Source: Squalus acanthias (lineage: Eukaryota). From it: a DNA stretch of 64,000 nt. The position numbers and the translations under genes are program-made. Below the pieces are notes generated by a model. That model ran no database searches and was not told the DNA's origin. It saw only the letters and a list, made by a program, of their open reading frames with translations. Within the stretch, counting starts at the first letter, position 1, and each line of letters starts with the position of its first letter. Of the stretch, positions 23,921 through 48,998 are shown piece by piece. Where the stretch lies: contig CM059453.1 of the NCBI GenBank assembly GCA_030390025.1, positions 7,564,001 to 7,628,000 on the forward strand. The letters are read 5' to 3'.

Positions 23921-26779
23921 GAAAGTCTTGCTATTCTTTTTGTTCCGAAATGAAATAAAAGTTCGAACTGGGAAATAGTTATTTTATTATTAAAGCAGAT
24001 AAAAAAGTTTAAATTTACATTGACCATTCTCGCACTCTTGCTGCACCGCTTCCGAAGTATGTTTGGAGTGGACAATCTTTGGGATTGTAAATCAAATCGT
24101 CTCACAAAGAGATTTTAAAATATAAGCTATTACTCTCGGAAATATATCCATTACCACTGCACTTCCTGGAGTGCGAGTTTCTGTTCGAACACATAAAAAA
24201 CAATTGTGTGAAGGTATTGACCAGTTCCATCTGTCAGAATCGGGTGAATGCCGCAGATTTTCATTTGCTTTTAATTGCGGCGTATTCACTGGACTCCTCG
24301 TGCTGGAGATATCGCTCCTGCTTTCGAACGTTTGAAACACTGACAGCTGCATACAGGACCTCTTCACTTTGAGCTGACTGGTTTGATGGAGCCCCTCTCA
24401 CACCAATGTTTCTATACTTGTCTTGTCTCTGTAACAGAAAGTAGTGCGTTAGATGTGGAGCTACTGAACCGGGTGAGACAGCGCTTACTAATCCAGAATA
24501 ACCCGCTTTATTTCATCACTGCCACCATTCTAATTGCCCCATTCAGCTCCTTCTGCCTCGAAAGGGAAACTTGGGCTTCCGCTGGCCCCGAGTACCTGCA
24601 CGCCAAGAGTTATAGCCTGTCCTCAAAACTTAGCCGATTGATTTAGATAGCGCCGCGAACGTTCAGAGGAGCGGCTCTAAACAACATTTGAGAACGACCT
24701 TTAATGTCCCTTTATACATTTAATAGGTTCAAATAACACTTACATTGGACAGAAATCTGTGTGGAGCTGTTTGCGGTGCCCAGGTTATTTTCAGCCACGC
24801 ACCAATACTCCCCCTCATCTTCAGAACTAATGCTGCAAATATCTCCTTTAGTTCACCGGTGGAAGACCTGCTGATCTCTGCACCATCTCGGAGCAATGTT
24901 AAACTGACCGGCGGGTTCCCCATGGCCGTTCAGTATAATAATAATGAACTTCATTCCAATGTTACTATAGAGGAATTGAGGCTTGGTTTCCACAGTGCAG
25001 CTGAAACACCCAAGATCATTGGTGTTGTAGCAAAATGTCGGAGCAGAGGTTTAAAAAACAATCCGGTTGAGAACCAACGAAGAATGTTACTGCAGATATG
25101 GTGGTTATATTGTCAACTGTAAATTGAAAAGCCAGCGTGAGATTGTTGATGTTCCACCGACAAGCTTATTTAGATCTGAAGCATGCTTTATCTCAACCTT
25201 TCATCCTCTTCTCTTCAAAGAGTTGTAGTGACTTCCTGGACGTGGTTCTGCTCCACCGATACGTCAATCAAGCGGCCATTCCTCCCAGAGCAAGAACAGT
25301 GGGCTTTGCCATCCCTTAAATAGAGTTGTTGAGGCCAATTGTATTAACCCGACCACCGCCCCAGCCAACTTGACACAATCCCTCTGATTCAGGTACTCTC
25401 TGGCTGCAACTATATCAGGAATTAGGAGCCTTTGGAATAATATTTGACGTAAACGAAAACCACAGAACGACCAATATTATTCCACGGGTCTGTGGCAATG
25501 TTAAATACTACAAATTACAGTAAATCTCAGATGGACAATTTGATTCATTAATTATAGAAACATAGGCCATTCTACACTTCCAGTCTGTTGCACTAATCAA
25601 TTAGATCATGGTTAATCCGTATCGTAAATCCGTCTACCCGCCTTTGCTTTATTGTAACCCTTAATACACTTAACTAAAATAAAAATCTATCCATCGCAGT
25701 TTAGAAATTTTCAATTTTCCAGACCAGCTGTCACTCCACTGAGAATAAAGACAAGTTTGGATCCTATTTACCAACAGGATGGTATAATGACTGGTACAGC
25801 AGTTACTTACAGTCCAGTGTAAGTGTTTCTTGAACGGTACCCACCACACCATCTAATACAAGTTAATATCCCAGCCTTTTCCCTTTTTGATCCAGTGATG
25901 GGGTGAAATTGAAAGTTGATGCAACCGTCCAGGAACGCGCGAAACTTTTCCACTGTGACTTGAAGTTTTTGTCTCTTGCAGTGTAGGAAGTTTATACTCG
26001 TCCTGAATCCACATCAGTTCAGGTTTGGCGGACGGGCAACTGGTGGTGACTGAGCAGGTCAAATGTGCTGGTTGTCCAGCAAACAGTTCCCCAGAGACTG
26101 ATATCCATGATTTATCTGTAAGGAGAGAAATCAATTCGCGTTCCAGTGGCTTCCAATATAAAAATAAAGTGGAGTGAAGTTCAAGGCGATTCAGCCTGAG
26201 ATAATATCATGAATAGAAATGATTTTTTTTCAATTGTTCTCTGGTGACGGACACGGCCTCGATGGACCGAATGACCTCCTTATGTGCCGTTATGAAACTA
26301 CGGTGCAGGGGAAGGAGCCTATTGTCAGTTATTACTTAACGGTAAAGGAATCAATCGGTTGATATATGTGTTCCTCAACCTAATTATCACCCACTATATA
26401 ACATGTATTATTCATTGCTGGCCTGTTTCTTATAGTTCAGTCACTACTCTATAGCGCATAAGTGTTTCCACTCAAAATTAGTTCTGACAGAAATAGAAAA
26501 CTGTGTCCAAGATTATGCTCCATATCTGCAGTTAGGATAGAATCCAGGATACTCTTAGACTCATAGCTCAGTGTCACGTGAAGCGCTTAAATTACCCGAT
26601 GAGGCACAGGGGCGAATTTAACTCATGCTTATAATTCATTTGACCTCATTTATGTTCGTGATAGGAGCGCTGCAGATGGACTTCATTGAGAAGGAAAGGT
26701 TAACTATCCTCGTTTGTTCCCATTAATAACAGCGGGAGAGTGCAAAGATATCAGAAGAAAGCAAGACCCGGTTCTGTGT

Positions 26780-27020
26780 TCAAGCCCCACTTCAGAGATT
26801 AAAGCGCAAGCTGTAGCCTGACACTATATTGCAGTGCTGATGCAATGCTACAATGCTGGAGATGCCATCTTATGGATGAGACTTGAAACCGATGTCCCGT
26901 CTTCCCTCACAGGTGGATGTAAAAGATCCCAATGTATTATTTCAAATGTCCCGTGTCCTGGTTAACATTTTCCATCAACCAGCACCTAAAACAGATAATC
27001 TGGTCACTATTGCATTGCTG
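26780..27020 (+). mobile_element. Deu-type SINE fragment without expansion (related copies ~7030-7330, ~44860-45190, 63930-64000)
   Basis: ttcaagccccacttcagaga..gatgccatcttatggatgagac..aggtggatgtaaaagatccc. Confidence 0.6.
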
Positions 27021-27239
27021 AGCTATCCCTCCTATCCTTAAATCTTGTCCACTTATTCCCCCTCAGAAGTACAAACCTTAATATTTTTGTCGCGAATCCA
27101 CTAATGATTGAATTTTGACCCGCCAGTCTGTACATCTGAAAACAACATTTTGTGTTTCTCTTTCTATCTGAACATTACAGCGAGCTTTTGTAAGGTCGTA
27201 ATAATGCTAGGGCCGAATATCTGTTCTGGTCAAAACATA

Positions 27240-30200
27240 ACAAGTCAACTGGTCCAGATGGAATGCATCCTAGGCTGCTGAGGAAGCTAGGATGGATATA
27301 GCAGAAGCTCTAACCACAATCTTCAATCCTCCTTGGATATTGGAGTGATACCTGAAGACTAGAGGATTTCAAATGGTACACCACTGTTCAAAAAAGTGGA
27401 GACGGATGAACCTGGGAACTACAGGTCAATCAGTCTAACGTCACTGGTGGGAAAGCTAAATAAGTCCACTGTGAAGGAGAGGATTAATTCTCACTTGGAG
27501 AAGCATGGGTTAATTAGGGACAGCCAAGGCGGTTTTGTTGAAGGCAAATCGTGCCTGACTAATCTTATTGAGTTCTTTGATGAAGTAATCATTGCGGGGA
27601 CGTTTGCTAGTACTGTTGGGAGGCGTTTAAACTATCTTGGCAGGGGGATTGCTAACGGAGTGGAGCAATAGTAGGGGGTGATGCACAGCCAAATATAGAG
27701 GAAAAAACTATTCAGCCGGGAAGGCAGAGCAAATATGTAACGGCACAAGGGAGTATGGCAGGGTTGGATGGCATTCATTTTAATGCAAGGAGTGTTGCGA
27801 GTAAGGCAGATGAATTGAAGGTGTTGATGAACACATGGCAGAATGATATTTTTGCTAACACAGAGACATGGTTGAGGGAGGGGCTGGCCTGGCAGCTCAA
27901 TATTCCGGGGTACGGAATCTTCAGGCGAGACAGAGGGGCTGTAAAAGTGGAGGGGGTGTCGCAGTATTAATCAAGGAGTCAATTACAACTGTAAGGTGGG
28001 ATGATATCTTAGCAGGTTCCTCGAATGAGGCCATATGGGTAGAACTTAAAAACAAAAAGGGGGCAAGCACTTTGCTGGGAGTTTACTATAGGACCCCAAA
28101 GAGTCAGGGGGAGAAAGAGGAACAGATATGCAGGCAAATCTCAGAGAAGTGTAGAAATAATAGGGTAATAATAGCAGGGGATTTCCAATTCCCTAATATT
28201 AACTGGAATATTCAGAGTGTGAAAGGATTAGAAGGTGCGGATATCTTAAAGTGCATCCAGGAGATTTTTTGAGCCACCATGTAGTAAGTCCTACAAGAGA
28301 GGGCGGTACCGGTCATAATTCTAGCTATTGTAGCCGGGCAACTGGCAGATGTGTCAGTGGCAGAGCATTTTGGTGACATTGACCATAATTCGGTGAGATT
28401 TAAGGTATTCATTGAAAAGGACAAATTTGGACAGGAAATTAATGTTCTAAATTGGGGTATCGCCGATTTTAATATGATAAGGCAGGATCTGGCCAAAATG
28501 GTCTGGGATCAGCTACTTGTAGGAAAATCCACATCACAGCAGTGGGAGTCTTTCAGAAAGGAAATAGAGAGAGTACAACGCCAACATGTTCCCGTAAATG
28601 TCAAGGGTGGGAGCAACAAGCCCAGGGAACCCTGGATGTCAAGGAATACAAGAATGGATTCGGAAAAAAGGGAGGCTTTCGGCAGATAGAATGGACTAAA
28701 AACAGTGGAAGCCCGAGAGGAGTACAGAAAGTGAAGGGGGGTACTTCAAAAAGAAATTAGGAGAGCGAGGAGGGGACATGAAAAAAGACTGGCAGGCAAA
28801 ATAAGTGAAAATCCCAAGGTGTTTTATAAGTATATTAAGGGCAAGAGGATAACCAGGGAAAGAGTAGGGCCCATTCGGGACCAAAGTGGCAATATGTGTG
28901 AAGAGCCAGAAGATGTAGGTGAGGTTTTAAATGAATATTTTGCAGCTGTGTTTACTATGGAGAAGGGTGATGTTGGTATAGAAATCAGGCAGAGGGATTC
29001 TGATATACTTGAACAAATTAGTATTGAGAGGGAGGAGGTATTAGCGGTTTTAGCCGGCTTAAAAGTGGATAACTCCCCAGGCCCTGACGGGATGTAGCCC
29101 AGGATGCTGTGTGAGGCAAGGGAGGAGATTGCAGGGGCACTGACACAAATTTTCAGAACATCTCTGGCGACAGGGGAGGTGCCAGATGACTGGAGAACAG
29201 CTAATGTAGTACCAATGTTCAACGAGGGTAGTAGGGATAAACCAGGGAATTACAGGCCAGTGAGCCTAACATCAGTGGTAGGGAAATTATTCGAAAAATT
29301 CTGAGGGACAGAATCATTCTCCACTTGGAGAGGTAGGGATTCATCAGGGATGGTCAGCATGGCTTTGTCAGGGGGAGATCATGTCTGACCAATTTGATTG
29401 AATTTTTCGAGGGGGTGACTAGGAGTGTGGATGCGGGTAGTGCAGTTGATGTAGTTTACATCGACTTCAGTAAGGCTTTTGACGAAGTCCGACATGGGAG
29501 ACCGATCAAGAAGGTAAGAGCCCATGGGATCCAGGGCGATTTTGCACATTGAATCCAAAATTGGCTTAGTGGCAGGAGGCAGAGGGTGATGGTCGAAGTT
29601 TGTTTTTGTGACTGGAAGCCTATGTCCAGTGGTGCACCGCAGGGATCGGTGCTGGTAACTTTGCTGTTTGTAGTGTACATTAATTATTTAGATATGAATG
29701 TAGGAGGTATGATCAGTAAGTCAGCAGATGACTCGAAAATTGGTGGAGTGGTAAATAGCGAGGAGGGAGGCTTGATGTGCATGGACATAGATCCCTGAAG
29801 GCAGCATGACAGGTAGATAAGATCGTTAAAAAAGGCATATGTGATACATGCCTTCATTTGCTGAGGCATAGAATATAAGAGCAGGGAGGTTATCATGGAG
29901 CTGTACAAAACGCTAGTTAGGCCACAGCTGGAATACTGTGTGCAGTTCTGGTCACCACACTATAGGAGGGAAGTGATTGCATTGGAGAGGGTGTAGTGGA
30001 GATTCACCAAGATGTAACCTGGGCTTGAGCGCTTCAGCTATGCAGAGAGACTGGACAGGCTGGGGTTATTTTCCTTAGAGCAGAGAAGGCTGAGGGGGGA
30101 CGTGCTTGAGGTGTACAAAGTTATGAGGGGCACAGATAGGGTAGATAGAAAGGAACTTTTCCCCTTAGTAAAGGGGTCAATAACTAGGGGGCATAGTTTC

Positions 30201-31710
30201 AAGGTAAGGGGCAGGAGGTTTAGACGGGATTTGAGGAAAAACTTTTTCACACAGAGGGTGGTTGGAATCTGGAACTCACTGCCTGAAAGGCTGGTAGAGG
30301 CAGCAACCCTCACAACATTCAAGAAGCATTTAGATGGGCACTTGAAATGCCATAGCATACAAGGCTACGGACAAAGTGCTGGAAAATGGGATTAGAATCG
30401 ACAGGGCTTGATGGCCGGTGCGGACACGATGTGCCGAAGGGCCTCTTTCTGTGCTGAATAACTCTATGACTCAATGACTAACAGAGAGGGCTGATGAAGG
30501 TAGTGCAATAGCTGTTGTATATATGGACGTTCAAATGGCATTGGATGACGTACCTCACAACAGATCTATTCGGAAAATAAAAGCATATTTTATTTACGGG
30601 ACGGTGGCAACGTGAGTACGAAATTGGCTAAAGGATAGGAGGCAGAGTGAAGTGGTGAACGGCTTTTTTTCTGATAGGAGCGAAGTATGCTGTGGGATCC
30701 CCCAGGGGGTCGATCTTAGGACCATTGCTATTCTTGTTCTGTATAAATGACCTGGACTTGGTTATTGGGAGTAACGTTTCGAAGTTTGCGGGTGATACAA
30801 AACTTGGCAACGTATGTAATAGTGAGCATGATTGTAGCAGACATCAGAAGTACATCGACAGACTGGTAAAATGGGCAGGCACATGACAGATGCAATTTAC
30901 TGCGGATAAGTGTGAAATAATGCACTTTGGGTGCAATATATGGAGAGGCAATATAATCTAAATAGTACCATTTTGAGGTCGGCTGCAAGAACAAATGGAC
31001 ATGGGGTGCATATTCACAAAACTTTGAAGATGGCATTGGAAATTAACAAGGCGTTTATTATGAAAGCACATAGGATAATTCGGTTCTTTTTTACATAGCG
31101 GCATTGCATACAAAAACAAGGAAGTCATGTTCAAGTTTTACAAATCGCTGGTTTGGCCTCAGCTGGAGTATTGTGTACAGATCTCGGCACCACACTTGAG
31201 GAAGCAGTTCAAGGTCCTGGAGGAGGTACTGAAGACGTTTGCCAGGCTAATACCAGGGACGAGGGCGTTCAGTTACATGTAGAGATTGGAGAAGCTGGGC
31301 TTGTTCTCCTTATAGCAGATAAGGATAACGGGAGACCTAACAGTGCTATTCAAAATTGATGGGTTATGATAGAATAATTAAGGAGAAACTATTTCCTCTG
31401 GCAAGTGGGTTGGTAAGCAATGGTCTCACATTTAAACCAACTGGCATAAGAACTCGTGGGGAAATGAGGAGAAATGTCTTCACCCAGAGGGTTGATAAGA
31501 TTTAGAATGCACCACCTTTAAGAATGGTGGAATCCGATTCAATGGGTACCTTTAAAAAGCAATTGAAACTGTCCTACAAAAAAGGCTGATTTACAAGGAT
31601 CTGTGGAAAAAGATGGGGAGTGGGACTAAATTTTATAGCTCTTTCAAAGATCCGGCACAGGCGTGGTGGGCCGCATGGCCTCCTTCTGTGCTGTAAGATT
31701 CTAAGATTCT
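27240..31710 (+). mobile_element. Older CR1 (27240-27588 and 30479-31710) interrupted by a younger CR1
   Basis: SCLTNLIEFFDEV continues as TERADEG after 30479; tail gattctaagattctatgattct. Confidence 0.85.
27589..30478 (+). mobile_element. Nested CR1: ORF1 end, degenerate ORF2 (APE endonuclease + RT), 3' tail
   Basis: NARS..TETWL, GVYYR, GDF, DHN, GNYRPVSLTSVVGK, RVVGIWNSLP; tail actctatgactcaatgac. Confidence 0.92.
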
Positions 31711-33528
31711 ATGATTCTTTTCTATGACACACGCATGGGTATTATGCCGTGTACCAGCCCTGCCGGGGAAGCCTGTGACTTGGGCCAAGAGTAACAAGAA
31801 ATCTTTAAACTTTAAGCTCAAGTTAAATGGCACCGAGGAGATGGAAGATAAACTATAAAAGGAACAATTCAAAAAACTTACATAAAATAGAAAGAGTGAC
31901 CTTAGAACCGGAAGAATATCTTTCTGTACTATTCTGGGCGGTGATGATCTTCAATATGAAATAATAATCACCTTGATCGCGCTTGAAGATGTCCTTTAAC
32001 CGTTAGGAACATTGTTTCTTTAGAAATGCGCCGGTGAACTCAGCTCGACCGCTATATTTCAAGTGCACGTTATCTGAATCCCGGGAATCATAGATAATCG
32101 AGACCCCTGAGGTTGCAGAATCAGGACCCCCCTTTAACCACATACCCTGTGGACTGCGGCCAGAGGCAGGATAATCAAATGTACACCGGATCTCTGCACA
32201 TATCCCAGTTCACCGCCGACACCTACCACGGCACCTTCACAGACCATCGTGAACTATGTACAACTGGTGAAAAAATAGAAGTTATACACGCATTGAAATC
32301 CGTAATAATATAGCAATTAAAACATACCCTGACCGTCAAGTTAAATACTATTAATTTAGCATATAAACACCCACTAACAAATTAATTTGTACATCTAATG
32401 AAATTCAAGCAATTTTCTCCAAAACTCTTTAAATTCTGTTAAATATTCCATTGCAAGCCAATATATCATAGCGTAATTATCAAATCAATCCTATATAACA
32501 CAAAATAAAGTTCCGAATAAAATATACATTAAATACCCACTGTCTGAATGCACAAATCATTGACTGAACGTATGCTATGTCTAAAACATTGTTATTTTTT
32601 CTGACATAAATTATTAAAAATGAAAATTTTACCTTCGCTAAATATCAGAATGGAAATAACTCCAATACTCTTCATGACTGGAGGCGGTTGACGATGTCAA
32701 AATGACATAAATTGTCTTTATCTTAGATATAAGTGATGTACTTTCTGTATTCGGTTCGCCGGTAATATATTGGAGTTCGTAATGAATCGAATCACAATAT
32801 TAGGAGGTCAGCTGTTCGCCACCCAACAATCATTGGGAACCGTGGTAGCTCACACAGCTTTCGCCACTCCTCAAATGTTGTTGATCTAAACTGCTGGAAA
32901 TCTGGGACTCCTCAAATATAACAGTTTACATCAGTGTGTGATCCACTGTTGCAGGATATACGAGGCTCACCGACTGCTAAAGAACACTGAGCAGAGATAC
33001 ATCCAGTCCCCTCAACCTCTGCACAGTTGCAGGACAGGCAGTGGCACTTTAGATTGCAATTTTTAAAATAGCTTCTACATCAACTTGAGACGCCTCGACT
33101 CTCAACTCCCACACACTGAGCTATTTATCAGCGCTTGAACTGTGAGTGTTTGAAGTGTGAAGCTGTGGTTAGTCCTGTAGCCGTTGTCTACAGACGTGTG
33201 GGTTGATCACCTTCAGTAGTTCGGGGGCACAACACGTATCTGAAATGTCAAAAGTTCAAGTGTTTCTCAGAAAACAGTTTCAAGAGCGTAAATTGCCATT
33301 TTTAGAATTGACTTCAGCTGTTTATATTAACAGTCCAGCGAGCAGAAATCTGCTGAAATTAACTCATTGAGATCCGAGTTGCTCCAATGACAGGTTTATG
33401 AAGTTTCTGACTTTAGTGTTAGAACTGTGAGGTGTGACTTGAGCTTTTAGATTCGAGTCTCAGCGCTGCTGGAAAGAATGTGGATATTTTTATCTACGGG
33501 AACAAATCCCTGCGATGTGTTTTCACAA

Positions 33529-33795
33529 CCAGGTCTCAGCTTGGCTTTACTGACTAGTTTAGGGTGTGTGTTCAGACCCAGGTCTCAGCTTGGCTTTACT
33601 GACTAGTTTTGGGTGTGTGTTCAGACCCAGGTCTCAGCTTGGCTTTACTGACTAGTTTAGGGATATGTGTTCAGACCCAGGTCTCAGCTTGGCTTTACTG
33701 ACTAGTTTAGGGATGTGTGTTCAGACCCAGGACTCAGCTTGGCTTTACTGACTAATTTAGGGATGTGTGTTCAGACCCAGTTCTCAGTTTGCTTT
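33529..33795 (+). repeat. 49-50 bp minisatellite, 5 full units plus a partial
   Basis: ccaggtctcagcttggctttactgactagtttagggtgtgtgttcagac, near-identical units. Confidence 0.95.
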
Positions 33796-35165: not shown

Positions 35166-35175
35166 GGAAGTGAAA
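35166..35175 (+). promoter_or_regulatory. ETS-IRF composite element (EICE) GGAAGTGAAA
   Basis: Exact GGAAnnGAAA ending 20 nt before the gene B ATG; AP-1 TGAGTCA at 34771-34777. Confidence 0.5.
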
Positions 35176-38200: not shown

Positions 38201-41200
38201 AGTTTAACATAAGTGGGAACATATGTTACCCGATGAGCCATAAAACTGCATTACAACTGCGAGGAGTAATTCAGAGTGCTGAACACACTTGCAACACGTA
38301 GCAGACAAAAAGGAACTAAATGTAATTTTCATTTCACCTCCTTCTCAGATTTAGCTGGAAGCCAACACTCGCCCGTTCTAACGTTGAAATGTACCTAACA
38401 CGCTGGTTTTCTCCCGTTTTAATAGAAACGCCACGTATTTCAAGCTATGGCGAACAGATCGCTGGAAAAACTGCACGATTCACCTGTTCCATCACACACA
38501 ACTGCCCGAATGGCAACCTGCAACTGAGGTGGATTAATTACAATGAGTCCCTTCCTCTTCCGTGGGATACACAAGGAGGAGCAGGAATGATCAAAGAACA
38601 TTCAGATTCTCGGACAGTTTCATCCGTGCTGACCGTCACTCTATCATCTGCTCATGACGGGAAAATTCTGGGATGCACAATTCTAATTGATGGTATCCCA
38701 ACTCCTTCAGCACAAAATCTTACCTTGGAGATTAAATGTAAGTGTCCGGTCTAAAGTAAACAGACTTATCCTGTTGGCCAACGGGCTCAAAATTTGCACT
38801 TTTACCACAAGTAATTTATTAGGGGTTAGAACTGCATCAAGAATGCATCATGAAAAACTCAGCCTCTGTAGCAGGAGAGCTCACTTCGATAATCAAAGGT
38901 TCGGAATGGCTCACATCTAAATCTTGTCAGTCATATTACATTAGAAACATTCATATCCATGAACCAATGATGGTGCCTCCAATAGATGTTTTAATGTGAT
39001 TGTTAATCTTTATTCTATGAACTTCCAGTCAGGTTCTGAGATTAGTCAGTCATAAATGGAAGCAACAAAGTCCATGCCGAGTTAAGATCTGATGCTATGG
39101 CATCAGATCTCAGCTCTGGTTGGGCTTAATAAGAATTTAAGAATTAGGGAAAGGAGTAGGCCATACGGCCCTTCGAGCCTGCACTGCCACTCCGGCAATG
39201 CTGGCTGATCATCGAACTCAACTCCAATTTCCCGCCCGATCCCCATACCCAATATAATGAATTAATTAGGAGCTCAATAATGCTTATTCGACAATCACGT
39301 TTTGCGTTAACGCCTGTTTCAGATGGAGTGGAAATCCCTACCGTCAACTCCTCTATAGTAGCTGTGGAAGGAAGTTCATTATTATTATACTGCACAGCCT
39401 GGGGAAAACCCCTGGTAAGTTTAAGATGGGTGAAAAATTGTGAAGAGATGAGCAGGTCTTCCACTGGTGAACTAAAGCTGATATTGCGCAACATTCGTTC
39501 TGAGGATGACGGTGAATATTGGTGCATAGCGGAAAATACCCTGGTTACATCAAACCGGTCCACACAAGTTATTGTACAATGTAAGTATGTATTAATTTGT
39601 CAATTAGATAGTAGCCTTTCATTTGACGAACTGTGGATTAAATTCCAATTGTCTCTTGCCTGCTTGCTGGAAGGCACCCATGTGCATGAGTTTGGGATAG
39701 TTTCACCCCTTTCCGAGGCAATATCAGCAAACTGCCTCGATGGCTCCAATAATGGAAACTAACCTGGCATCTCGCTCAGTATGACAGGAGTGGAATATGG
39801 CACAATGTCTCATAAATGCAGCAGGTCTTACATTTAAGAGGGTAAGATACAAGCACATTTTCTGGGACCTTTAATCTACAACTAATTGTTCATAAGTTAT
39901 ACTCGTCGTCTGAAATAAACAATTTCCCAATCCTTAGAACTGACTGGCAGCAATTTGATGAGTACAAATTCTTTCCAAAAAAAGTGTAATAAAATGGTGT
40001 TAAGCCAACTCCTGTTACTTGTACTAATGTTGAGTTAATAGTGTAATATTCTCGCGACTTGGTTCTTTGAATTGTCGCCTTGTGAGCCGGACGTTTATTG
40101 AAGAATCACGTCAGTCCACCACAAATGAAGATGTTTAAAACAGTACACAAAGAGAAGACATTGAAATAAATTGACCTTTTAAAACAGTGACGGGTGAGAC
40201 ACGTTTGTGCGTATATTATACATAATCAAATCGCTGAGCTAGCTCCGTCTGAGGGTCCCTCACAACATCTGTCAGGAGATGTATTGATGGACTGAACACT
40301 CATTGGATTTAATTTGGAATTGTTCCTAACGAGCTCACCTGTTATAAGTGAAAATAGAATAAGCCATCAACTGGTACAACATAGGCTGCTTCATTTTAAA
40401 ATATAACAACCAGAACTATGATGGTTAGTTCAACTCATTACTTAATTGTATTTCGACACTGCAACTGTTTACTTGATCATTTCCTATTGAAGTTTCCATT
40501 TTTTTTTAGATAAACCCACAATTTTAGCAGGCCCGACATGCACCAGCTCTGAGAATTGGACGGATTGTAGCTGCCGGATCAGAGCCAATCCCCCGGGAAA
40601 CATGACGTGGGACCTCAATGGGAGAAGCCTCACTGGGGAAAGGTCAGACGTGGAAATCACCTCCTGGGCGGCGAATAGTCACCTCATGGAGAGCTCCCTG
40701 AGATTGACTCACCCAACCGGAACCGGCAACCTGATCTCATGTGTTGCAGCAAACGAGCACGGTGATTCTGTCAGTAAATACCAGCTCCACTCGAAGGGTA
40801 CGTGTTTAATTTATCTTTAATCTAATACTATAAGGGAGTTGGTCCATCATGGTCAGTCACTAACTGAACGGTGTTAGTGTCAGCAAATAACTGCTCCATT
40901 CAGCAGGTCCATACTGAATCTCTCTCGAATTAGTGTAAGGACCTCTTTCCATCAGTGGTCAATCTCCACTGAAAAGTGTGCTCGGCAATATTCATTTTAA
41001 CTTTCAGTCTTCTGAAACTTGTTCGGTTTATATTTTGAAGATAAGATGGAATTATCTACGCACCAGAAGTAGCCAGTGATCTTGGAAAACAAATTCTTCT
41101 GAATTATGTTAATATTTTTAGAAAATCCAAATTGCTCTCAATACATGATATCAAACCGCAATCTACCCTTTTGTAGATACATTCTTAGGTCTATCTTGTT

Positions 41201-44200
41201 CAGACTTATTTTGGTATGTAGAACCGATATTCAATAACCGAAACTAAATTGAATTATCGCTATCGATTGTAAATCTTACCGCTGTAACTGGTGACCTTGG
41301 CGGGCCTGTATTCCGATCAGATTAAGCCCACTGTTTTTTCTAGGGTGGGTTGTGGAGTGACCTTCATTTTACAATTTAGATTTTTTCATCAGTGAATCTT
41401 AATTTGTTAATTCCAATTTACGCCAGGCCGCATTACATGAATAAAATGCTTTTACGCAAGGATCATCAGGTTGAGACAAGTGGAATACATAATTTACCAT
41501 TAGCTTTGTGATCCAAACATGAAGGAAACTTGCTTTCTCACACTCATAAATGTGCTTCCAAGATTGTTGTTTAATCCCAAATTCCTAATATCGAGCAATG
41601 TTATCCGACATTTTAGGAATATTCTCCTGGACAATCCTCCTCATAATAGGAGGAGGAGCCATTGGGCTTCTTATTCTAATTGCAGTCGTGATCACGGTGA
41701 AGATAAAAAGGTAGGTGTGATTATTAATTATACAGAATTAAGGTTCAAAGGAAACCTGCATCAGAACGTCCGTGTATCAAAATCTCCTTTAAATTAAACT
41801 CCCGTGAGTACAGTGGGCATCAGCCTAAACTGATGCGTAAAGTAGGTAGGTCAGTCATTCCAGACCAGTCGCTCGCATCTCCAAGCATCAAATACAGAGT
41901 AATATTAGTGGCTGCTTGAATCAGGCTGTCTGTACATTATTCCTGTTATGTTATTGGGGTCTGTTTCCTTCTGTTTAAAGGGGACATTTCTGGACTTCTG
42001 ATCGCTGGCGCTCTGTGTGCCAGGGAGTGTTTACGCTTCCCGTGCAATCTTGATAAAGTTTTCATCAGGCTCAAAGAAAGGGCATACAAGCCCTTTCAGT
42101 TTGTTTCTGTTGCTACTTTTATGGGGCACCCTCAGACGAGCCTCCTTGTCATGACTGACTCTCAGCATAACACTACACCAGATTGACACTTAAGTTATAT
42201 CAATCAAGCTAATCCAGCAAACAGTAAACCAACAAGCAAACAGTAAAATTAACGTGTCACATACGTTTACAGTCGTTGTTAAGTTGTTTCGCTCAAGGAG
42301 TAGAACATTATATTTCAAAATTGGGTGTGACTGATGTGCTAAAGTATGATATAAGCAGTTATTTATGTTGCGCTTGTTATCTTATTCTTCCCAGTGATTT
42401 AAGCTATTTCGTCTGACTAGCTTTCTTTCAAAGCTCTAGACAGACTCGCTGCTTTTAATAGACAGGCTGATAATTACATTCTGAATTGTGACCGGCTCCA
42501 ACTGAATTCAAATAACACCCAATCAGGTTTACAATCTGCTGCCAATCAAATTTATCCTTCAACCAATCGGACAGGATGTGTACAATTGAAATCTATGACG
42601 CCGCCCCTCAACAGACAATGTTTCGACAACAACCGCAACAGCATGAGCCAGAACACTCTTTTAGCTTTTAATCCTTCATGTACCATGAAATATTTAATGA
42701 AGGCAATTCCATGCTTAATAATATCAACTAATCAATGATCGCAAAAAGATTGATGAGGAATATTGATGTATTCCTAATTTCTAACTCCAATGTGTTGAAG
42801 TGGTCTACCTAATAATAGAAAGGACTGCGTTGACACATTGAAACACTTCCATCTGCTATTTACCCAGTTTGAAATCATTAATAAACCTCCCACTGACCGT
42901 TATTTATCACACTCAACTTTCAGCTAGCGCAATCAGCACAGTATCATTAACACCAATCATAGATAAATTAAAATGTACCCTTTTGAAATGTTGGCTGGTG
43001 GAAATTGAAACGAATTGGGTTGCGGATCTGGTCTGTGCTTTTTGGGAGAAGTAAAAGACACAAGGTGCCAAATAAAAGGTTATTACATAAGATTAGGGCT
43101 CATGCGGTTGGGGGTTATATAGTTGCATGGATAGAGGATTGGTTAACAGACAGAAAACAGTGTAGGTATAAACGGATCTTTTTCAGGTTGGCAGGCTGCA
43201 ACTTGTAGGTTGCCGCAATGATCAGTGTTGGGGCCCCAGCTATTTACAATCCATATTAATGATCTAGATGAAGAGACCGAGTGTAATGTATCCAATTTTT
43301 TTGATGATACAAAACTAGGTGGGACAGTAAGCTGAGAGGAGAACACAAAGCCTCTGCTAAGGGATATAGATAGACTAAGTGAGTGGGCAGTAAGGTGGCA
43401 GATGGAGAATAATGTAGGGAAATGTGAAGTCATTCACTTTGGTAGGAAGAATAGCAAAACAGAATATTTTTTATTTGGTGAGAAACTTTCAAATGTTGGT
43501 GTTCAGGAAGATTTGGGTGTCCTCGTGCAAGAAACACAGAAAACTAGCATGCAGGTACAGCAAGCAATAAGGAAGGCAAATGGCATGTTGGCCTTTATTG
43601 CAAGGGGGTTGGAGTGTCAGATTAAGGACGTTTTGCTACAATTGTACAGGGCCTTGGTGAGACCACACCTAGAGTACTGTGCACAGTTGTGGTCTCCTTA
43701 TCAAAGGAAGGATATATTTGCATTGGAGGCGTGCAACGAAGGTTCACTAGATTGATTCCTGGGATGAGAGGGTTGTCTTACGATGACAGATTGTGAAGAA
43801 TGGGCCTATATTATCTGGAGTTTAGAAGAATGAGAGGTGATCTCTTTGAAGCAGACAAGATTCTGAAGAGGATTGACAGGGTAGATGCTGACAGGCTGTT
43901 TCTCCTGGCTGGAGTCTCTAGAAATAGGGGGCATAGTCTCAGGATAAGGGGTAGGCCATTTAAGACGGAGATGAGGAGTAATTTCTTCGCTCAGAGGGTT
44001 GTGAATCTTTGGAGTTCTTTGCCCCAGAGGCCTGTGAATGCAGAGTTTTGGATTATATTCAAGGCTGAGATAGATAGATTTTTGGACTCTTGGGGAATCA
44101 AGGGATATGGAGATTGGGCGGGAAATTGGAGTTGAGTTCGAAGATCAGCCATGATCTTATTGAATGGCGGAAAACTCTAGAGGGGCCGTATGGCCGACTC

Positions 44201-47200
44201 CTGCTCCTATTTCTTATTTCTTATGTTCTTAATTCTTTCCTGTCCCCCTCACGTCCTTCATCGCGCAGGCGCAATGTGCTTCCACTAAACATTCCAGTTA
44301 ATTAAGGGAAGTGCCTCATTTGCATTTGTTATTAATCAGGAAGAAACATGGAGAAGCTGCACGTGTCTCCGACGCACACGATGATTTGGTGATTTACAGT
44401 ACGGTGCAGAAGGCACTAAACGATGACGTAAGTGATGCCAAGCTGGGCTGACAATTGTAGGATGTTTGGTGTGCTTTCAACCGGCAAGTGACCAATAAAG
44501 GTCAATACCCAACAGATAAACGGGAGTTACAGAAACTTGTTGGCCTTTAATGGAGGATTAACCACCTCACGTCGCGAAGAGTGCAACAGAGCTACAGACT
44601 CTACATTAAGTGACCTACTAAATACAATTAGAATGTATTTCTCACCTTGGCGTTCCTTCTCAAAGCTAATTATTTCTATAAGAATGCGTTTCCAATGTTA
44701 TCTTACCTCCTACCAATTAGGTTTCACGTGTTAAATGTCCAACACGATCACAAAGTGTTGGCGACACAGAGGGGATAAACATTTTACTTCCTCAGGTGCA
44801 ACTCCGAATTGCATCTTGCTGCCGATGTGCTCCCCATGTTCCTCACATTTCATTCAGAAGGTTGTGGCTTCAAGCTTCGCTCCAGCATTTGAATCTATAA
44901 TCTGGGCTGAAACTTCATTTCAAAACTGAAGGAGTGCAACATTGCCTGAAGTCCCGTTCTTTCGATTAGATGTTAAACGAGGCCCCGTTTGTTTCCTGCT
45001 ATGGAGGGAAACGATCTTATGTTGCTACTGTGTTGTCGGTTGAGAGTCTTCCCAGTGCCCTTGCAAACATTTCTCCCTCAATGAACACCAGCTAAAACTG
45101 ATTAATTCGCCATTCATCCCATTAACTGGTTGTTGCATTTTTTCTGCAACAGCGGCAAGAATTCAAAATTTATTATTTGCAAAGCATCGATTCGGTCTTA
45201 ATAATCACAGAATCAAGCAGCCCAGAATGAGGCCATTCAGCCCATGGTGCCTGTGCTGGCTGTATGAAAGAGCTAAATAATTAGTCACACTACACTGATT
45301 TTGCCCTTAGCCCTGATTTAATTTTTTTTTCATATTCACGCATATATCCATTTCCCTTTTGAAAGTCACTATTGAATCTGCTGCCACCGCCATAGAGGCA
45401 CCTCATTCCAAATCAAAACAACTCGCTGAGCTAAAAAAAAAATCTCACCTCACATTTGGTTCTTGTCCCAAATATCTTCAATCTGTGTCCATTGGTTAGC
45501 TACGCTCCTGCCAGTGGAAACAATTTCTCCTAAATTTTGTGTCAAAATTCTGCAGAATTTTGATCACCAATATCTAATCTCCCTTTAACATTCTCTAGAC
45601 TAAGCAGAACAATCCCAGTTTCCCTGGACTCTCCGTTTAAGTGCAGTCCCTCATTCCTCCATTAATTCTAGCAAATTTGCTCTGTACCCTCTCTAAGGCA
45701 TTGACATCGTTTTGACAGTGTAATGCACAGAATTGGACGAAATACATCAGCCGAGGCCCAACAACTGATGTATAAAGGTTCAGCGTATTTTCCTTGTTTC
45801 CATAATCTGTACCTCAATTTATAAAAACCCGGATCACGTATGTTATTTAGAAGCCTTAGAATTATTTTACGGCACAGAAGGCGGCCATTCGGCCCGTTGT
45901 ACCTGTGCCGGCTCTTTGAAAGATGTTTCCAATATAATCCCACACCCAAGCGATATCGACTCGTACGGATATACAATTGCATTTTCTTTATTTCTTATAG
46001 AATCATAGAATAATAGAAGATAGGCGCAGGAGTAGGCCATTCGGCACCTCTAGCCTGCTCCACCATTCAATGTGATCATGGCTGATCATCCAAATTCACT
46101 ACCCTGTCCCTGCTTTCTCCCCATATCCCTTGATCCCTTTAGCCTTAAGAAATATATCCAACACCTTCTTGAATCTATTTAATGAATTGGCCTCTACTGC
46201 CTTCTGTGGCAGAGAATTCCACAGGTTCACCACTCTCTGGGTGAAGAAATTCCTCCTCATTTCTGTCCTAAACGGCTTACCCCTTATCCTTCGACTGTGG
46301 CCCCTGGTTCTGGTCTCCCCGACCATTGGGAACATCCTTCCTGCATCTAGTTTGTCCTGTCCTGTCAGAATGTTATAAGTTTCAATGAGATCCCCTCTCA
46401 TTCTTCTTAACTCCAGCGAGTATAAGCCCAATCGACCCAATCTCTCTTCATACGTCATTCCTGCCATCCCAGGTATCAGCCTTGTGAAACTTCGCTGAAC
46501 TCCTTCCATGGCAAGAACATCCTTCCTCAGATAAGGCGAACAAAACTGCACACATTACTCAAGGTGTGGTCGCACCAAGGCCCGGTACAACTGCAGCAAG
46601 ACATCCTTGTTCCTGTACTCAAACCCTCTCGCTATGAAGGCCAACATACCATTTGCCTTCTTAACCGCCTGCTGCACCTGCATGCTTACCTTCAGCGACT
46701 GGTGCACAAGGACACCCAGATCTCGTTGCACTTCCCCTTCTCCCAATCTATTGCCATTCTGATAATAAACTGCCTTTCTGTTTTTAACACCAAAGTTGAT
46801 AACCTCGCATTTATCCACGTTATATTGCATCTGCCACGCTTCTGCCCAATCACCCAACCTGTCCAAATCATCCTGGAGTTTCTCGGCATCCTCCTCGCAG
46901 CACACACGCCCACCCAGTTTTGTGTCGTCTGCAAACTTGAAGATATTACATCTAGTTCCCTTGTCTAGATCATTAATATATATTGTGAATAGCTGGGGTC
47001 CAAGGACCGTTCCCTGTGGTACCCCACTAGTCACTGCCTGCCACTCGGAAAAAGACCCGTTTATTGCAACTCTTTGCTTTCTGTCTGCCAACCAGTTCTC
47101 TATCCAAGTCAATACCTTGCCCCCAATCCCATGTGCCTTAACTTTACACGCTAATCTCTTATGCGGGACCTTATCAAAAGACTTTTGGAAGTCCAAATAC

Positions 47201-48998
47201 ACCACATCCACTGGTTCTCCCTTATCTATTTTAGCAGTTACATCCTCAAAAAATTCCAGTAGATTAGTCAAGCATGATTTACCTTTTGTAAATCCATGTT
47301 GACATTGTCCGATCCTGTCACTGTTTTTCAAGTGCTCAGCTATTACATCTTTTATAATGGACTCTAGCAATTTCCCCACTACCGATGTCAGGCTTACCGG
47401 TCTGTAATTCCCCGTTTTCTCTCTACCACCCTTTTTGAATAGTGGGGTAAAGTTTGCTACCCTCCAATCCATGGGTACTGTTCCAGATTCCATCGAATGT
47501 TGGAAGATGATCAGCAATGCATCTACTATTTCTAGGGCCACTTCCTTAAGTATCCTAGGATTTAGATTATCAGGCCCTGGGGATTTATCGGCCTTCAATC
47601 CCTTCAATTTCCCTAACACCATTTCCCTAAAAATACTGATTTCTTTCAGTTCCTCACTTTCATCAGACCCTATGTTCCCCAACATCTCTGGGAGGTTATT
47701 TGTGTCCTCCTTTGTTAAGACAGAACCAAAATATGTATTTAATTGGACTGACATTTCTTTGTTCCCCATTATAAGTTCCCCTGATTCTGACTGCAAGGGA
47801 CCTATGCTTGATTTCACTAATTTTTTTCTCTTCACATATCTATACTAGCTTTCACAGTCAGTTTTTATGTTCCCTGCAAGCTTACTCTCGTATTCTATTT
47901 TCCCCTTCTCAATTAATCTCTTTGTCCTCCTTTGTTGAATCTTAAACTGCTCCCAATCCACAGGGTTACTGCTTTTTCTGGCCAATTTATATGCCCTCTC
48001 CTTGGATCTTATGCTATCCCTAATTTCCCTTGTTAGCCATGATTGAGTCACCCTTTTTGTTTTATTCGTATGCAAACTGTGTTGAATAAATTCAGTAGTT
48101 CGTCCATGCGGTCTTTGAATGTTTGCAATTGCCTATCCACCGTCAACCTTTTGAGTGACATTCCACAATCAATCCTAGCCAACTCGCACCTCACACAATC
48201 GTAGTTTACTTTATTTAAATTCAGGACCCTAGTCTCTGATTCAACTACTTCACTCTCCATCCTAATGAAGAATTCTATCATATTATGATCGCTCCGACCC
48301 AAGGGGCCTCGCACAACAAGATTGCTAATTAATGCTTTCTCATTGCATAATACTCAGTCTACGATGGCCTGATCTCTGGTTGGTTCCTCGACATATTGTT
48401 CCAGGAACCCATCCCGTAAACACTCCAGGAATTCCTTCTCCATAGTATTGTTACTAATTTGGTTAGCCCAACCTATATGTAGATTAAAGTCATCCAAGAT
48501 GACTGCTGTGCCCTTATTGCACGCTTCTTTAATTTCCCTTTTAATGCCATCCCCAACCTCCGCATTACTGTTTGGAGATCTATATATCACTCCCACTAAC
48601 GTTTTCTGCCCCTTGTTGTTTCTCAGTGCAACCCATACAGATTCCACATCATCAGAGCTAATATCATTCCATCAAGACTTAACAACGCTCATCTCATGGA
48701 TCAGCACCATTAGAAAACTTACCAGGGAAAAAATAGTTCGATTTCTTCTGGTGCAGACAGCACACTCCCATCGCATTCTACTCCATATCTGCAATAGTTG
48801 CATATCTAACACAAATACCTTCCATTACAGAGGGACGATCAGTGTACAGAGGCTGGTCGTGGCGCCGCACAATCGACTAAACCAGCTCAGAATGAAGAGA
48901 TTGCGTACGCAACCGTCAATGTCTCCAACTTCCGCAAACATGATCAATATATTCAAAATGAGGAGACCTGCGAATATGCAGCAATTAAACAGAACTGA
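35195..48998 (+). CDS. Complete Siglec/MAG-like inhibitory receptor gene B, 8 exons, 543 aa
   Basis: Exons 35195-35237, 35872-36252, 38426-38737, 39323-39580, 40510-40797, 41617-41710, 44340-44427, 48831-48998 sum to 1632 nt, all GT-AG, in phase, no internal stop. AATAAA at 49073-49078. Confidence 0.9.
35872..36252 (+). CDS. Gene B V-set exon, Siglec-type
   Basis: CAEIRCTF (two B-strand Cys), VTWLK, RAEFKG, QCSLLL (E-strand Cys), DQGTYEFSIE with no F-strand Cys. Confidence 0.92.
38426..38737 (+). CDS. Gene B Ig domain 2 (C2-set)
   Basis: FTCSITHNCP (extra Cys as in Siglec D2), LRW, TVSSVLT..HDGKILGC; aatag|..T|gtaagt. Confidence 0.92.
39323..39580 (+). CDS. Gene B Ig domain 3
   Basis: Paralog of 1730-1987; 258 nt open. 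Confidence 0.9.
40510..40797 (+). CDS. Gene B Ig domain 4
   Basis: KPTILAGPTCTSSENWTDCSCRIRANPPGNMTW..SCVAANEHG; 288 nt. Confidence 0.9.
41617..41710 (+). CDS. Gene B transmembrane exon
   Basis: IFSWTILLIIGGGAIGLLILIAVVITVKIKR; 94 nt. Confidence 0.88.
43055..44230 (+). mobile_element. CR1 LINE 3' fragment, counterpart of 5220-6390
   Basis: KCEVIHFG, LVRPHLEYC, FAQRVVNLW; same flanks as unit 1. Confidence 0.9.
44340..44427 (+). CDS. Gene B cytoplasmic exon 1 (ITIM VIYSTV)
   Basis: KKHGEAARVSDAHDDLVIYSTVQKALNDD|gtaagt. Confidence 0.86.
45997..48669 (-). mobile_element. CR1 LINE, most of ORF2, unit 2 only, in the last intron of gene B
   Basis: ORFs 48354..48647, 48048..48314, 46555..47835 (NYRPVSLTS, QHGF, GVPQG, FADD), 46099..46551; empty site near 8140. 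Confidence 0.94.
48831..48998 (+). CDS. Gene B terminal exon (ITIM IAYATV and CEYAAI)
   Basis: ttacag|AGG GAC..EEIAYATVNVSNFRKHDQYIQNEETCEYAAIKQN*. Confidence 0.86.
   Translation, partial: RDDQCTEAGRGAAQSTKPAQNEEIAYATVNVSNFRKHDQYIQNEETCEYAAIKQN

What the first reader, a model, noticed from the sequence alone, without database searches (positions are those of the whole stretch)
24261..48998. Tandemly amplified cassette of head-to-head Siglec-like receptor genes with triple-tyrosine inhibitory tails
Seen: a complete 543-aa V-C2-C2-C2-TM gene with tail motifs VIYSTV, IAYATV and CEYAAI; its ATG (35195) faces away from a paralog's ATG (32675) 2.5 kb upstream; the arrangement repeats every ~37.6 kb. 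Known: two B-strand Cys, an E-strand Cys and no F-strand Cys in D1, plus an extra D2 Cys, define Siglecs. Inference: a lineage-specific inhibitory receptor family under birth-and-death evolution in a cartilaginous fish, distinct from MAG (5 Ig) and CD22 (7 Ig). The ITIM exons are absent from the ORF track, so automated annotation could miss them.
Basis: partly seen in the sequence, partly recalled or inferred. Interest (0 to 1): 0.85.

Follow-up and report, generated by a model that had tools for sequence, protein, structure and literature searches.

The report
Shark Siglec-like inhibitory receptor array
A shark-type genome carries a tandemly repeated block holding one intact inhibitory immune-receptor gene built like a Siglec but lacking the residue that Siglecs need to bind sialic acid, next to a decayed copy of a sister gene.

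Summary
The plus-strand gene (35195-48998) is an 8-exon, 543-codon model with GT-AG at every intron: signal, V, three C2 domains, TM and a tail with VIYSTV, IAYATV and CEYAAI. The block repeats in tandem about every 37.2-37.6 kb.

Three parts of the interpretation need correcting.
- **Partner gene.** The head-to-head gene (ATG 32675) is a pseudogene, with at least 8 stops or frameshifts and no C2c, TM or first-ITIM exon. One nonsense change is shared by both units, so the decay predates the duplication.
- **Family range.** The family is not species-specific. RefSeq already predicts it in many sharks and rays as Siglec-5/8/12/13/14, MAG-like or sialoadhesin-like. Some of those models have the same architecture and tail, so automated annotation does find the ITIM exons.
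- **Arginine.** The V domain has the Siglec cysteine pattern and fold, with sialoadhesin as best match, but Ser replaces the essential arginine. 14 of 15 rows of its elasmobranch clade also lack it.

The most likely reading is an ITIM-signalling inhibitory receptor derived from Siglecs whose ligand is probably not bound in the canonical sialic-acid way. No RNA evidence was obtained, and CD33-related, Siglec-1 and Siglec-15 references could not be fetched for the tree. The scan's own notes list 86 unchecked 'Siglec' findings elsewhere in this genome.

The parts
35195..35237 (+). Gene B exon 1: start codon and signal peptide (MRSSVLLSLMMLTE), ends in phase 1
   Evidence: Colinear with the N-termini of P0010 and P0002.
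35872..36252 (+). Gene B exon 2: V-set domain with the Siglec cysteine pattern. Ser stands at the canonical arginine position (GTYEFSIEF).
   Evidence: Pfam V-set 1.2e-11 and Ig_CD22 2e-10. Sialoadhesin 2.1e-11. AF2 pLDDT 90.4. Foldseek top hit sialoadhesin D1, 1.8e-10. Residue table.
38426..38737 (+). Gene B exon 3: first C2 domain (D2) with an extra Cys (CSITHNC)
   Evidence: sub-threshold Ig hits. The alignment to MAG D2 alone is not significant (E 0.63). The family profile aligns both Cys to MAG and Siglec-8.
39323..39580 (+). Gene B exon 4: second C2 domain (DDGEYWCIAEN)
   Evidence: Pfam Ig_2 4.9e-13 and I-set 5.2e-12. 72-73% identical to P0010 and P0159.
40510..40797 (+). Gene B exon 5: third, membrane-proximal C2 domain (C..C.C motif). 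Aligns with MAG D5 in the family profile.
41617..41710 (+). Gene B exon 6: transmembrane segment with no charged residue in the hydrophobic core. Ends in phase 2.
   Evidence: 75% identical to P0010 431-458.
44340..44427 (+). Gene B exon 7: first ITIM (VIYSTV)
   Evidence: motif kept in relatives.
48831..48998 (+). Gene B exon 8: second ITIM (IAYATV), ITIM-like CEYAAI, stop codon
   Evidence: (69% identical to P0162 407-461).
1732..9593 (+). Gene A (unit 1 copy of gene B), exons 4-8: 1732-1986, 2914-3198, 4025-4114, 6501-6587, 9426-9593. All are open with AG/GT kept. Exons 1-3 lie before the window.
   Evidence: 77-86% aa identity to gene B; motifs VIYSTV, IVYATV, CEYAAM.
1100..1150 (+). Point where unit 1 stops being homologous to unit 2, exactly at the position of the exon-3 donor. 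Unrelated sequence lies upstream.
24261..32675 (-). Unit 1 pseudogene of the sister clade. Signal exon 32675-32633 is intact. V (about 32320-31883) has 2 stops and 1 frameshift. C2a (26104-25806) has a frameshift and a stop. C2b (24986-24745) has 2 stops and a 1-bp deletion. The last exon (24428-24264) is open (VLYAAV, SEYAAI). No C2c, TM or first-ITIM exon.
61413..63291 (-). Unit 2 copy of the same pseudogene. Last exon 61584-61426 has 2 stops, C2b 62144-61902 has 1 stop, and C2a 63211-62987 has 1 stop. The V exon lies beyond the window end.
   Evidence: TGC to TGA at the B-strand Cys codon of C2b, shared with unit 1.
32676..35194 (.). 2.5-kb spacer between the two diverging start codons. Holds a 50-bp tandem repeat of 5.7 copies at 33514-33796.
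27396..30400 (+). LINE fragment (endonuclease-reverse transcriptase ORF pieces) inside the pseudogene's V-C2a intron
   Evidence: Pfam Exo_endo_phos_2.
43000..44300 (+). LINE 3' fragment in gene B intron 6, shared with unit 1 (5264-6393)
   Evidence: very high contig cover typical of a repeat.
45995..48650 (-). LINE (RVT_1 8.6e-32, endonuclease) in gene B intron 7, absent from gene A intron 7
1145..26851 (.). Unit 1 of the tandem duplication. Its partner is 38739-64000.
   Evidence: blocks of 708-4029 bp at 81-91% identity.

Best explanation
The window holds about 1.7 units of a tandem segmental duplication in an elasmobranch genome. Each unit of about 37.5 kb carries three things:
- one apparently intact gene for a type-I membrane receptor (V, three C2 domains, uncharged TM, and a tail with two canonical ITIMs plus a conserved C-terminal [C/S]EYAxI motif);
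- a decayed copy of a gene from a sister clade, facing it head to head;
- a LINE-rich spacer.

The receptor belongs to an old, elasmobranch-wide clade descended from the Siglec branch of the Ig superfamily. It keeps the Siglec V fold, the B-E disulfide cysteines and the D1-D2 cysteine pair. The F-strand arginine that all sialic-acid-binding Siglecs use has been replaced (Ser here, I/S/L/T in relatives).

Most likely mechanism (inferred, not shown): ligand engagement leads to phosphorylation of the tail tyrosines by Src-family kinases, SHP-1/SHP-2 are recruited, and leukocyte activation is damped. The ligand is probably not sialic acid bound in the canonical way.

Shown here: gene structure, intactness, duplication, pseudogene state, fold, residue pattern and clade membership. 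Inferred: expression, cell type, ligand and phosphatase recruitment.
For: - **Gene model.** Intact 543-codon model with all GT-AG introns and Ig-typical phase-1 exons. It is colinear with RefSeq relatives exon by exon.
- **Tandem unit.**
- **Second copy.** Gene A exons 4-8 are open with splice sites kept. dN/dS is 0.46 over the two C2 exons, and the tyrosine motifs are kept.
- **V domain.** Pfam V-set and Ig_CD22, sialoadhesin 2.1e-11 by sequence and 1.8e-10 by fold on a pLDDT 90.4 model.
- **Family profile against solved structures.** MAG 5e-60, Siglec-8 1.5e-35, Siglec-5 8e-29, CD22 4e-27, CD33 1.4e-26.
- **Cys pattern and Arg column.** Arg is present in 1 of 15 clade-A rows, 5 of 9 clade-B rows, 10 of 10 MAG rows, 2 of 3 CD22-like rows and 13 of 14 other rows.
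- **Cys covariation.** The two clade-A proteins that lack the first C2 domain (P0004, P0160) are also the only two clade-A rows that lack the first B-strand Cys.
- **Tree.** Gene B lies inside a 99/93-supported clade of 15 shark and ray rows.
- **Tail.** The motifs are conserved across relatives.
- **Pseudogene lesions.**
Against: - **No transcript evidence.** The only three runs offered had next to none of the words, and their contigs covered only the repeat parts of the 6-kb stretch laid. No exon was covered apart from a trace depth of about 5 in the bin that holds part of exon 4.
- **Tail substitutions.** TM plus tail between genes A and B shows 27 non-synonymous against 5 synonymous differences (dN/dS 1.6, small counts). 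This fits relaxed constraint as well as divergence of function.
- **Weak single-exon support.** Exons 3 and 5 reach no Pfam cut-off on their own. D2 alone has no significant PDB match.
- **Third motif.** CEYAAI fits neither the ITIM nor the ITSM consensus.
- **Tree limits.** The tree uses the V domain only (128 columns) and lacks CD33-related, Siglec-1 and Siglec-15 references. The clade-B grouping of the pseudogene has only 85/78 support.
- **Gene A.** Its exon-3 donor is replaced by unrelated sequence, so the second copy may be impaired or may skip that exon.
Confidence: 0.7

Rival explanations
1. Gene B still binds sialic acid or another acidic glycan through a non-canonical site, so it is a working Siglec in spite of the missing arginine.
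For: The rest of the V domain is conserved across the clade. A search listing shows a paper reporting glycolipid recognition by Siglec-6 through a non-canonical pocket (PMC10122656, title and start of abstract only).
Against: Arg is kept in 10 of 10 MAG rows and 13 of 14 other relatives, but in only 1 of 15 clade-A rows. No basic residue replaces it at that column: the replacements are S, I, L or T.
Confidence: 0.15
2. Gene B is a silent or recently dead copy. The open frame is a leftover of a young duplication and not maintained by selection.
For: No RNA evidence. Tail dN/dS is 1.6 against gene A. Pseudogenes and TE insertions are common in the array. Gene A has lost its exon-3 donor.
Against: 1632 nt stay open with 14 of 14 splice dinucleotides intact, while the neighbouring pseudogene at the same age of duplication has gathered several lesions per exon. 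Synonymous divergence from gene A of about 0.07-0.17 leaves ample time for decay. Ectodomain dN/dS is 0.46. All three tyrosine motifs are kept in both copies.
Confidence: 0.1
3. The gene is a MAG-type adhesion molecule of the nervous system and not a leukocyte inhibitory receptor.
For: MAG is the best solved match of the family profile (5e-60), including the D5-like membrane-proximal domain. RefSeq names several relatives MAG-like or Schwann cell myelin protein-like. PMC7226832 (passages read by find) says that MAG of salmonid fish carries ITIMs.
Against: - Four Ig domains, not five.
- No R118 equivalent.
- The V domain lies outside the 100/99 MAG clade.
- A multi-copy tandem array with pseudogenes is unlike the single conserved MAG gene.
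- For D1-D3 constructs, Siglec-8 scores as high as MAG (125.8 against 125.7 bits).
Confidence: 0.05

Closest known systems
Myelin-associated glycoprotein (MAG, Siglec-4)
   Same: - Best solved-structure match of the family profile (5e-60, 206 bits).
- Same V-domain cysteine pattern and D2 C-x5-C motif.
- Near-identical DDGEYWCVAEN strand in a C2 domain.
- Membrane-proximal domain aligns with MAG D5.
   Different: - Four Ig domains against five.
- Ser instead of the essential arginine (10 of 10 MAG rows keep it).
- Two ITIMs plus an ITIM-like motif in the tail.
- Tandem multigene array.
- The V domain falls outside the MAG clade.
CD33-related Siglecs (such as Siglec-5, -7, -8, CD33)
   Same: Tested here: a short ectodomain with a V domain plus a few C2 domains, and solved members matching the family profile at 1e-26 to 1e-35. 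From recall, not tested here: a membrane-proximal ITIM plus a membrane-distal ITIM-like motif, fast-evolving tandem clusters with pseudogenes, and occasional arginine-mutated members.
   Different: - The relationship could not be tested in a tree, because no reference sequences could be fetched.
- Three tyrosine motifs.
- Loss of the arginine is clade-wide and old, not sporadic.
- PMC7226832 (passages) states that fish genomes lack CD33-related Siglecs. That paper deals with teleosts.
Sialoadhesin (Siglec-1) V domain
   Same: Best single-domain match of gene B's V exon by sequence (2.1e-11) and by fold (1.8e-10, TM 0.76-0.83). B- and E-strand cysteines align without gaps.
   Different: The arginine of GTYNFRFE is Ser in GTYEFSIEF. 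From recall: sialoadhesin has 17 Ig domains and no ITIM.
RefSeq-predicted elasmobranch proteins, such as XP_067831324.1 (Heptranchias perlo, 545 aa) and the Pristiophorus japonicus protein P0162
   Same: P0010 has the same V-C2-C2-C2-TM architecture and tyrosine tail. P0162 has the same tail but two C2 domains. Both belong to the same clade in the V tree, and both lack the arginine.
   Different: Only 55-75% identical exon by exon, so they are not the same gene or species. They are computer predictions with borrowed names, and no functional study was found.

Membership tests
Siglec family (sialic-acid-binding Ig-like lectins) | N-terminal V-set domain of the Siglec type | tested here: met
   Pfam V-set 45.2 bits and Ig_CD22 41.5 bits, both above cut-off. 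Sialoadhesin 2.1e-11. Foldseek top hits are sialoadhesin, with Siglec-7, MAG, Siglec-10, Siglec-8 and CD33 further down.
Siglec family (sialic-acid-binding Ig-like lectins) | Cysteine pattern: B-E intrasheet pair, no F-strand Cys, extra B-strand Cys partnered by an extra Cys in D2 | tested here: met
   Positions 21, 26 and 84 are Cys and position 101 is Phe. The D2 motif CSITHNC aligns with MAG and Siglec-8. The two clade-A members without D2 also lack Cys 21. The bonds themselves are not testable here.
Siglec family (sialic-acid-binding Ig-like lectins) | Essential arginine on the F strand that pairs with the sialic-acid carboxylate | tested here: not met
   Ser at that column in gene B and Ile in the pseudogene. 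The alignment to sialoadhesin GTYNFRFE has no gaps. Family table.
Siglec family (sialic-acid-binding Ig-like lectins) | Binding of sialylated glycans | not testable with these tools
   Needs a recombinant ectodomain and a glycan array or sialidase-treated cells.
ITIM-bearing inhibitory receptors | Cytoplasmic (I/V/L/S)xYxx(I/V/L) motifs after an uncharged TM segment | tested here: met
   VIYSTV and IAYATV fit the consensus, CEYAAI does not. The TM core has no charged residue. The motifs are conserved in gene A and in relatives from other species.
ITIM-bearing inhibitory receptors | Recruitment of SHP-1/SHP-2 after tyrosine phosphorylation | not testable with these tools
   Biochemical assay needed.
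MAG orthologs | Five Ig domains, conserved arginine, single-copy gene, placement in the MAG clade | tested here: not met
   Four Ig exons, Ser at the arginine column, tandem copies, and a position outside the 100/99 MAG clade.
CD33-related Siglec subfamily | Phylogenetic grouping with mammalian CD33-related Siglecs | tested here: inconclusive
   No tetrapod CD33-related sequences were obtainable. Only bit scores against solved structures are available, and they do not separate MAG from Siglec-8 for D1-D3.
Unprocessed pseudogene (minus-strand partner) | Intron-bearing copy with disabling changes in several exons | tested here: met
   - V: 2 stops and 1 frameshift.
- C2a: 1 frameshift and 1 stop.
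- C2b: 2 stops and a 1-bp deletion.
- Three exons are missing.
- One nonsense change is shared by both units.

The most novel reading that the evidence does not exclude
Clade A is an ancient family of Siglec-derived inhibitory receptors, predating the shark-ray split. It gave up canonical sialic-acid recognition for a different ligand. In elasmobranchs it has expanded into large, fast-turning tandem arrays, where it plays the part that KIR, LILR or CD33-related receptor clusters play in mammals. That would place rapidly evolving inhibitory Siglec-like clusters at the base of jawed vertebrates, contrary to the statement that fish lack such receptors.
Probability: 0.3. Interest if true: 0.7.

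Novelty: new variant of a known kind. Interest (0 to 1): 0.5.

Why it matters
Published work on fish Siglecs (PMC7226832, passages read) recognises only Siglec-1, CD22, MAG and Siglec-15 as regularly present, and states that fish lack inhibitory CD33-related Siglecs. This locus, with its predicted relatives in many sharks and rays, shows a multi-copy family of short, ITIM-bearing receptors with a Siglec fold in cartilaginous fish. It evolves by tandem duplication, pseudogene formation and TE insertion.

A whole old clade has lost the sialic-acid arginine yet keeps the fold and the inhibitory tail. That points to a change of ligand that can be tested at the bench. It offers a natural case for asking how Siglec-type domains acquire new specificities.

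The gene family itself is already visible in RefSeq predictions. The news is therefore its reading and its characterisation, not its existence.

Tried and rejected
**RNA evidence.** The look-up of sequencing runs listed no holder of the stretch. It offered only three small runs of the same species label, kind guessed. Read laying on 38430-44429 (likeness 85) put contigs only on the repeat parts (39030-39430 and 43030-44230). No exon was covered apart from a trace depth of about 5 in the bin holding part of exon 4. Expression stays open.

**Naming the species.** No protein retrieved is more than 75% identical to any exon. The nearest V domain is from Pristiophorus japonicus at 55%.

**A full Siglec tree.**
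- The representative search and three word-based searches returned elasmobranch family members, MAG orthologs and ray-finned-fish relatives.
- They returned no tetrapod CD33-related, Siglec-1 or Siglec-15 sequences.
- No chondrichthyan MAG ortholog appeared among the 120 rows listed.
- The tree therefore cannot place the family relative to those groups.

**D2 alone against solved structures.** No significant hit was found; MAG scored E 0.63. The cysteine match rests on the family profile.

**A third gene in the spacer.** A weak Ig-like match at 58448-58522 (E 0.01) was not confirmed. tblastn with all 324 stored proteins found no further IgSF exon outside the mapped ones.

**An activating partner.** I considered and rejected the idea that the facing gene is an activating partner. 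It has no TM exon at all and is disabled.

**Papers.**
- Searches found no paper on shark or ray Siglec-like receptors.
- Only PMC8455134 mentions Siglecs with cartilaginous fish, in one sentence (passage read).
- Its Supplementary file 9, which lists the gene families, could not be opened and may bear on the claim of novelty.
- Subscription-journal reviews on Siglec evolution are not in the library.

Full report
**1. What is in the sequence**

The window is AT-rich vertebrate-type DNA with two N runs, 15392-15635 and 52835-53507. These were left untouched.

A self-comparison (102 rows after removing the self-match and mirror rows) aligns 1145-26851 with 38739-64000. The aligned blocks are 708-4029 bp long and 81-91% identical. 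The window therefore holds about 1.7 units of a direct tandem duplication. Measured at homologous exons, the period is 37593 bp (exon 4 of the plus genes) and 37156 bp (last exon of the minus genes). Local offsets reach 41 kb where insertions differ.

**2. The plus-strand gene (gene B)**

Stop-to-stop reading frames and the splice-site sequences give eight exons. All have AG before and GT after, with entry phases 0,1,1,1,1,1,2,0. The total is 1632 nt, which is 543 codons and a single terminal stop.

The exons encode, in order:
- a signal peptide;
- a V domain;
- three C2-type Ig domains;
- an uncharged TM segment;
- a tail with VIYSTV (exon 7);
- IAYATV and CEYAAI (exon 8).

Pfam on single exons gives V-set and Ig_CD22 above cut-off for exon 2, and Ig_2 and I-set above cut-off for exon 4. 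Exons 3 and 5 get only weak Ig hits.

The exon peptides map one after another onto RefSeq relatives. Where the aligned stretches abut, as at exons 3/4 and 4/5 on P0010, exactly the one split-codon residue lies between them. This supports the junctions without using RNA.

**3. The second copy (gene A)**

Exons 4-8 of the unit 1 copy lie at 1732-9593. They are open and keep their splice sites.
- Against gene B, the two C2 exons give dS 0.17 and dN 0.078 (ratio 0.46).
- TM plus tail give 5 synonymous and 27 non-synonymous differences (ratio 1.6, small counts).
- The three tyrosine motifs remain (VIYSTV, IVYATV, CEYAAM).

Homology between the units stops exactly where gene B's exon-3 donor lies. 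Unrelated sequence lies upstream in unit 1. Gene A may therefore skip or lack that exon. Its exons 1-3 are outside the window.

**4. The facing gene is a pseudogene**

The minus strand has an intact signal exon (ATG 32675, GT donor). The remaining exons are damaged:
- **V exon:** a stop after VKVPW, a frameshift before TGICAEIRC, and a stop in KKQCS*RLKD.
- **C2a exon:** a frameshift and a stop.
- **C2b exon:** two stops and a 1-bp deletion.

No C2c, TM or first-ITIM exon exists between C2b and the last exon, which are about 300 bp apart. Intact relatives such as P0164 have these exons.

The unit 2 copy has one stop each in C2a and C2b, and two stops in the last exon. The TGC to TGA change at the B-strand Cys codon of C2b is shared by both units, while the other lesions differ. 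Inactivation therefore came before the unit duplicated, and decay went on separately afterwards.

Gene B is open over 1632 nt in the same assembly. Sequencing error is thus an unlikely cause of the lesions.

**5. The rest of the unit**

LINE pieces with endonuclease and reverse-transcriptase domains lie in the introns and the spacer. One of them, at 45995-48650, is present in gene B's intron 7 but not in gene A's.

tblastn with all 324 stored proteins found no further Ig exon.

**6. What family it belongs to**

*V domain.* The V exon matches the sialoadhesin V domain best, at 2.1e-11 without gaps. MAG (4e-6) and Siglec-7 (6e-5) follow.

*Structure model.* An AlphaFold2 model built with 35 aligned sequences has mean pLDDT 90.4. 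Its best Foldseek hits are sialoadhesin D1 (1.8e-10). Siglec-7, MAG, Siglec-10, PILR-alpha, Siglec-8 and CD33 also appear, among other V-set proteins such as CRIg and sodium-channel beta-2.

*Relatives.* A search of 1.84 billion representatives found 396 proteins at E up to 0.001, of which 150 were listed.
- I looked up names for 30 of the 150, and 22 of these are sharks or rays.
- The other 8 are ray-finned fishes (6), a frog and a lamprey.
- A word-based search with P0010 gave 21 proteins, of which 20 are elasmobranch.

*Family profile.* A profile of 18 family members matches solved MAG best (5e-60). Siglec-8, Siglec-5, CD22 and CD33 follow. The D2 C-x5-C motif aligns to MAG and Siglec-8, and the last domain aligns to MAG D5.

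**7. Tree and the arginine**

The V-domain tree has 53 rows and 128 columns (IQ-TREE).
- Gene B falls inside a clade of 15 shark and ray rows (99/93 support), next to a Pristiophorus protein (55% identity).
- The pseudogene groups with a Heptranchias protein in a second elasmobranch clade (85/78 support).
- Bony-vertebrate MAG (100/99) and elasmobranch CD22-like proteins (98/98) form separate clades.
- The tree is unrooted in effect. It contains long branches (frog, Mobula, pike, lamprey) and lacks CD33-related, Siglec-1 and Siglec-15 references, which I could not fetch.

The table below gives the residue at the column of the essential arginine, after alignment to one V-domain model.

| Group | Rows with Arg | Notes |
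|---|---|---|
| Clade A | 1 of 15 | The others are I, S, L or T. Gene B has Ser. |
| Clade B | 5 of 9 | The pseudogene has Ile. |
| MAG | 10 of 10 | |
| CD22-like | 2 of 3 | |
| Other rows | 13 of 14 | |

The Siglec cysteines are kept almost throughout. The two clade-A proteins without the first C2 domain are the two that lack the first B-strand Cys. This fits the expected D1-D2 disulfide.

**8. Reading**

The locus is a tandemly duplicated block. It holds one intact inhibitory receptor of a Siglec-derived, elasmobranch-wide clade and a dead copy of a sister-clade gene.

The tail has two canonical ITIMs about 50 residues apart and a conserved C-terminal [C/S]EYAxI motif, which lies about 24 residues after the second ITIM. 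It is conserved across species. This argues for signalling through SH2-domain phosphatases, which is inference from the known behaviour of ITIM receptors.

The clade-wide absence of the arginine argues against canonical sialic-acid binding, so I do not file the gene as a Siglec in the functional sense.

The age of the duplication, from 11-19% non-coding divergence, is probably tens of millions of years. This estimate rests on recalled slow substitution rates in sharks and is only an estimate.

**9. Limits**

- No RNA evidence could be had.
- Gene A's first three exons and the unit 2 pseudogene's V exon lie outside the window.
- The literature check covers only the open library, and supplements were closed.
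- The scan's own notes list 86 findings with the word Siglec in this genome, up to 1.5 Mb away and on other pieces. They are unchecked first-stage notes and were used only as leads.

Noticed in passing
window 57402-57685: 24-bp minisatellite of about 12 copies, present in unit 2. The corresponding part of unit 1 carries 71-bp arrays instead (17532-17822 and 19108-19448).
   Followed up: partly
window 23208-23635 and 60500-60828: 33-bp minisatellite (13 and 10 copies) just downstream of the pseudogene's last exon, in both units.
   Followed up: no
window 33514-33796: 50-bp tandem repeat, 5.7 copies at 93% match, in the spacer between the two diverging start codons.
   Followed up: no
window 1-1145: Sequence unrelated to unit 2 abuts the exact position of the exon-3 donor of gene A. 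It holds a 183-aa minus-strand ORF (58-609) with no Pfam hit. This may be a transposon insertion that removed the donor.
   Followed up: partly
window 24257-24452 (minus strand) and protein P0167: The Heptranchias RefSeq model P0167 lacks a TM segment and reads its tail exons in another frame. That frame of the window's pseudogene last exon matches it at 54% but has a stop. It could be a TM-skipping soluble isoform in that species, or a faulty model.
   Followed up: no
proteins P0008, P0003, P0001: Some relatives carry three, four or seven Siglec-type V domains in a row (Scyliorhinus, Hypanus, Paramormyrops). This architecture is unlike classical Siglecs.
   Followed up: no
window 13208-15178 (minus strand): A 656-aa open frame with a reverse-transcriptase domain (RVT_1 3e-8) next to an N run. 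Possibly a fairly young LINE copy.
   Followed up: no
proteins P0004, P0034, P0163, P0044 (Heterodontus); P0028, P0045 (Pristis): Family members and CD22-like proteins are reported on contigs of identical length (44,089,062 and 10,237,845 bp). This suggests that the family is linked to the CD22-like gene.
   Followed up: no
window 39182 and 44165-44171: Contigs of the three runs join these places on opposite strands. The places are the ends of repeat copies lying in opposite orientation in introns 3 and 6 of gene B.
   Followed up: no
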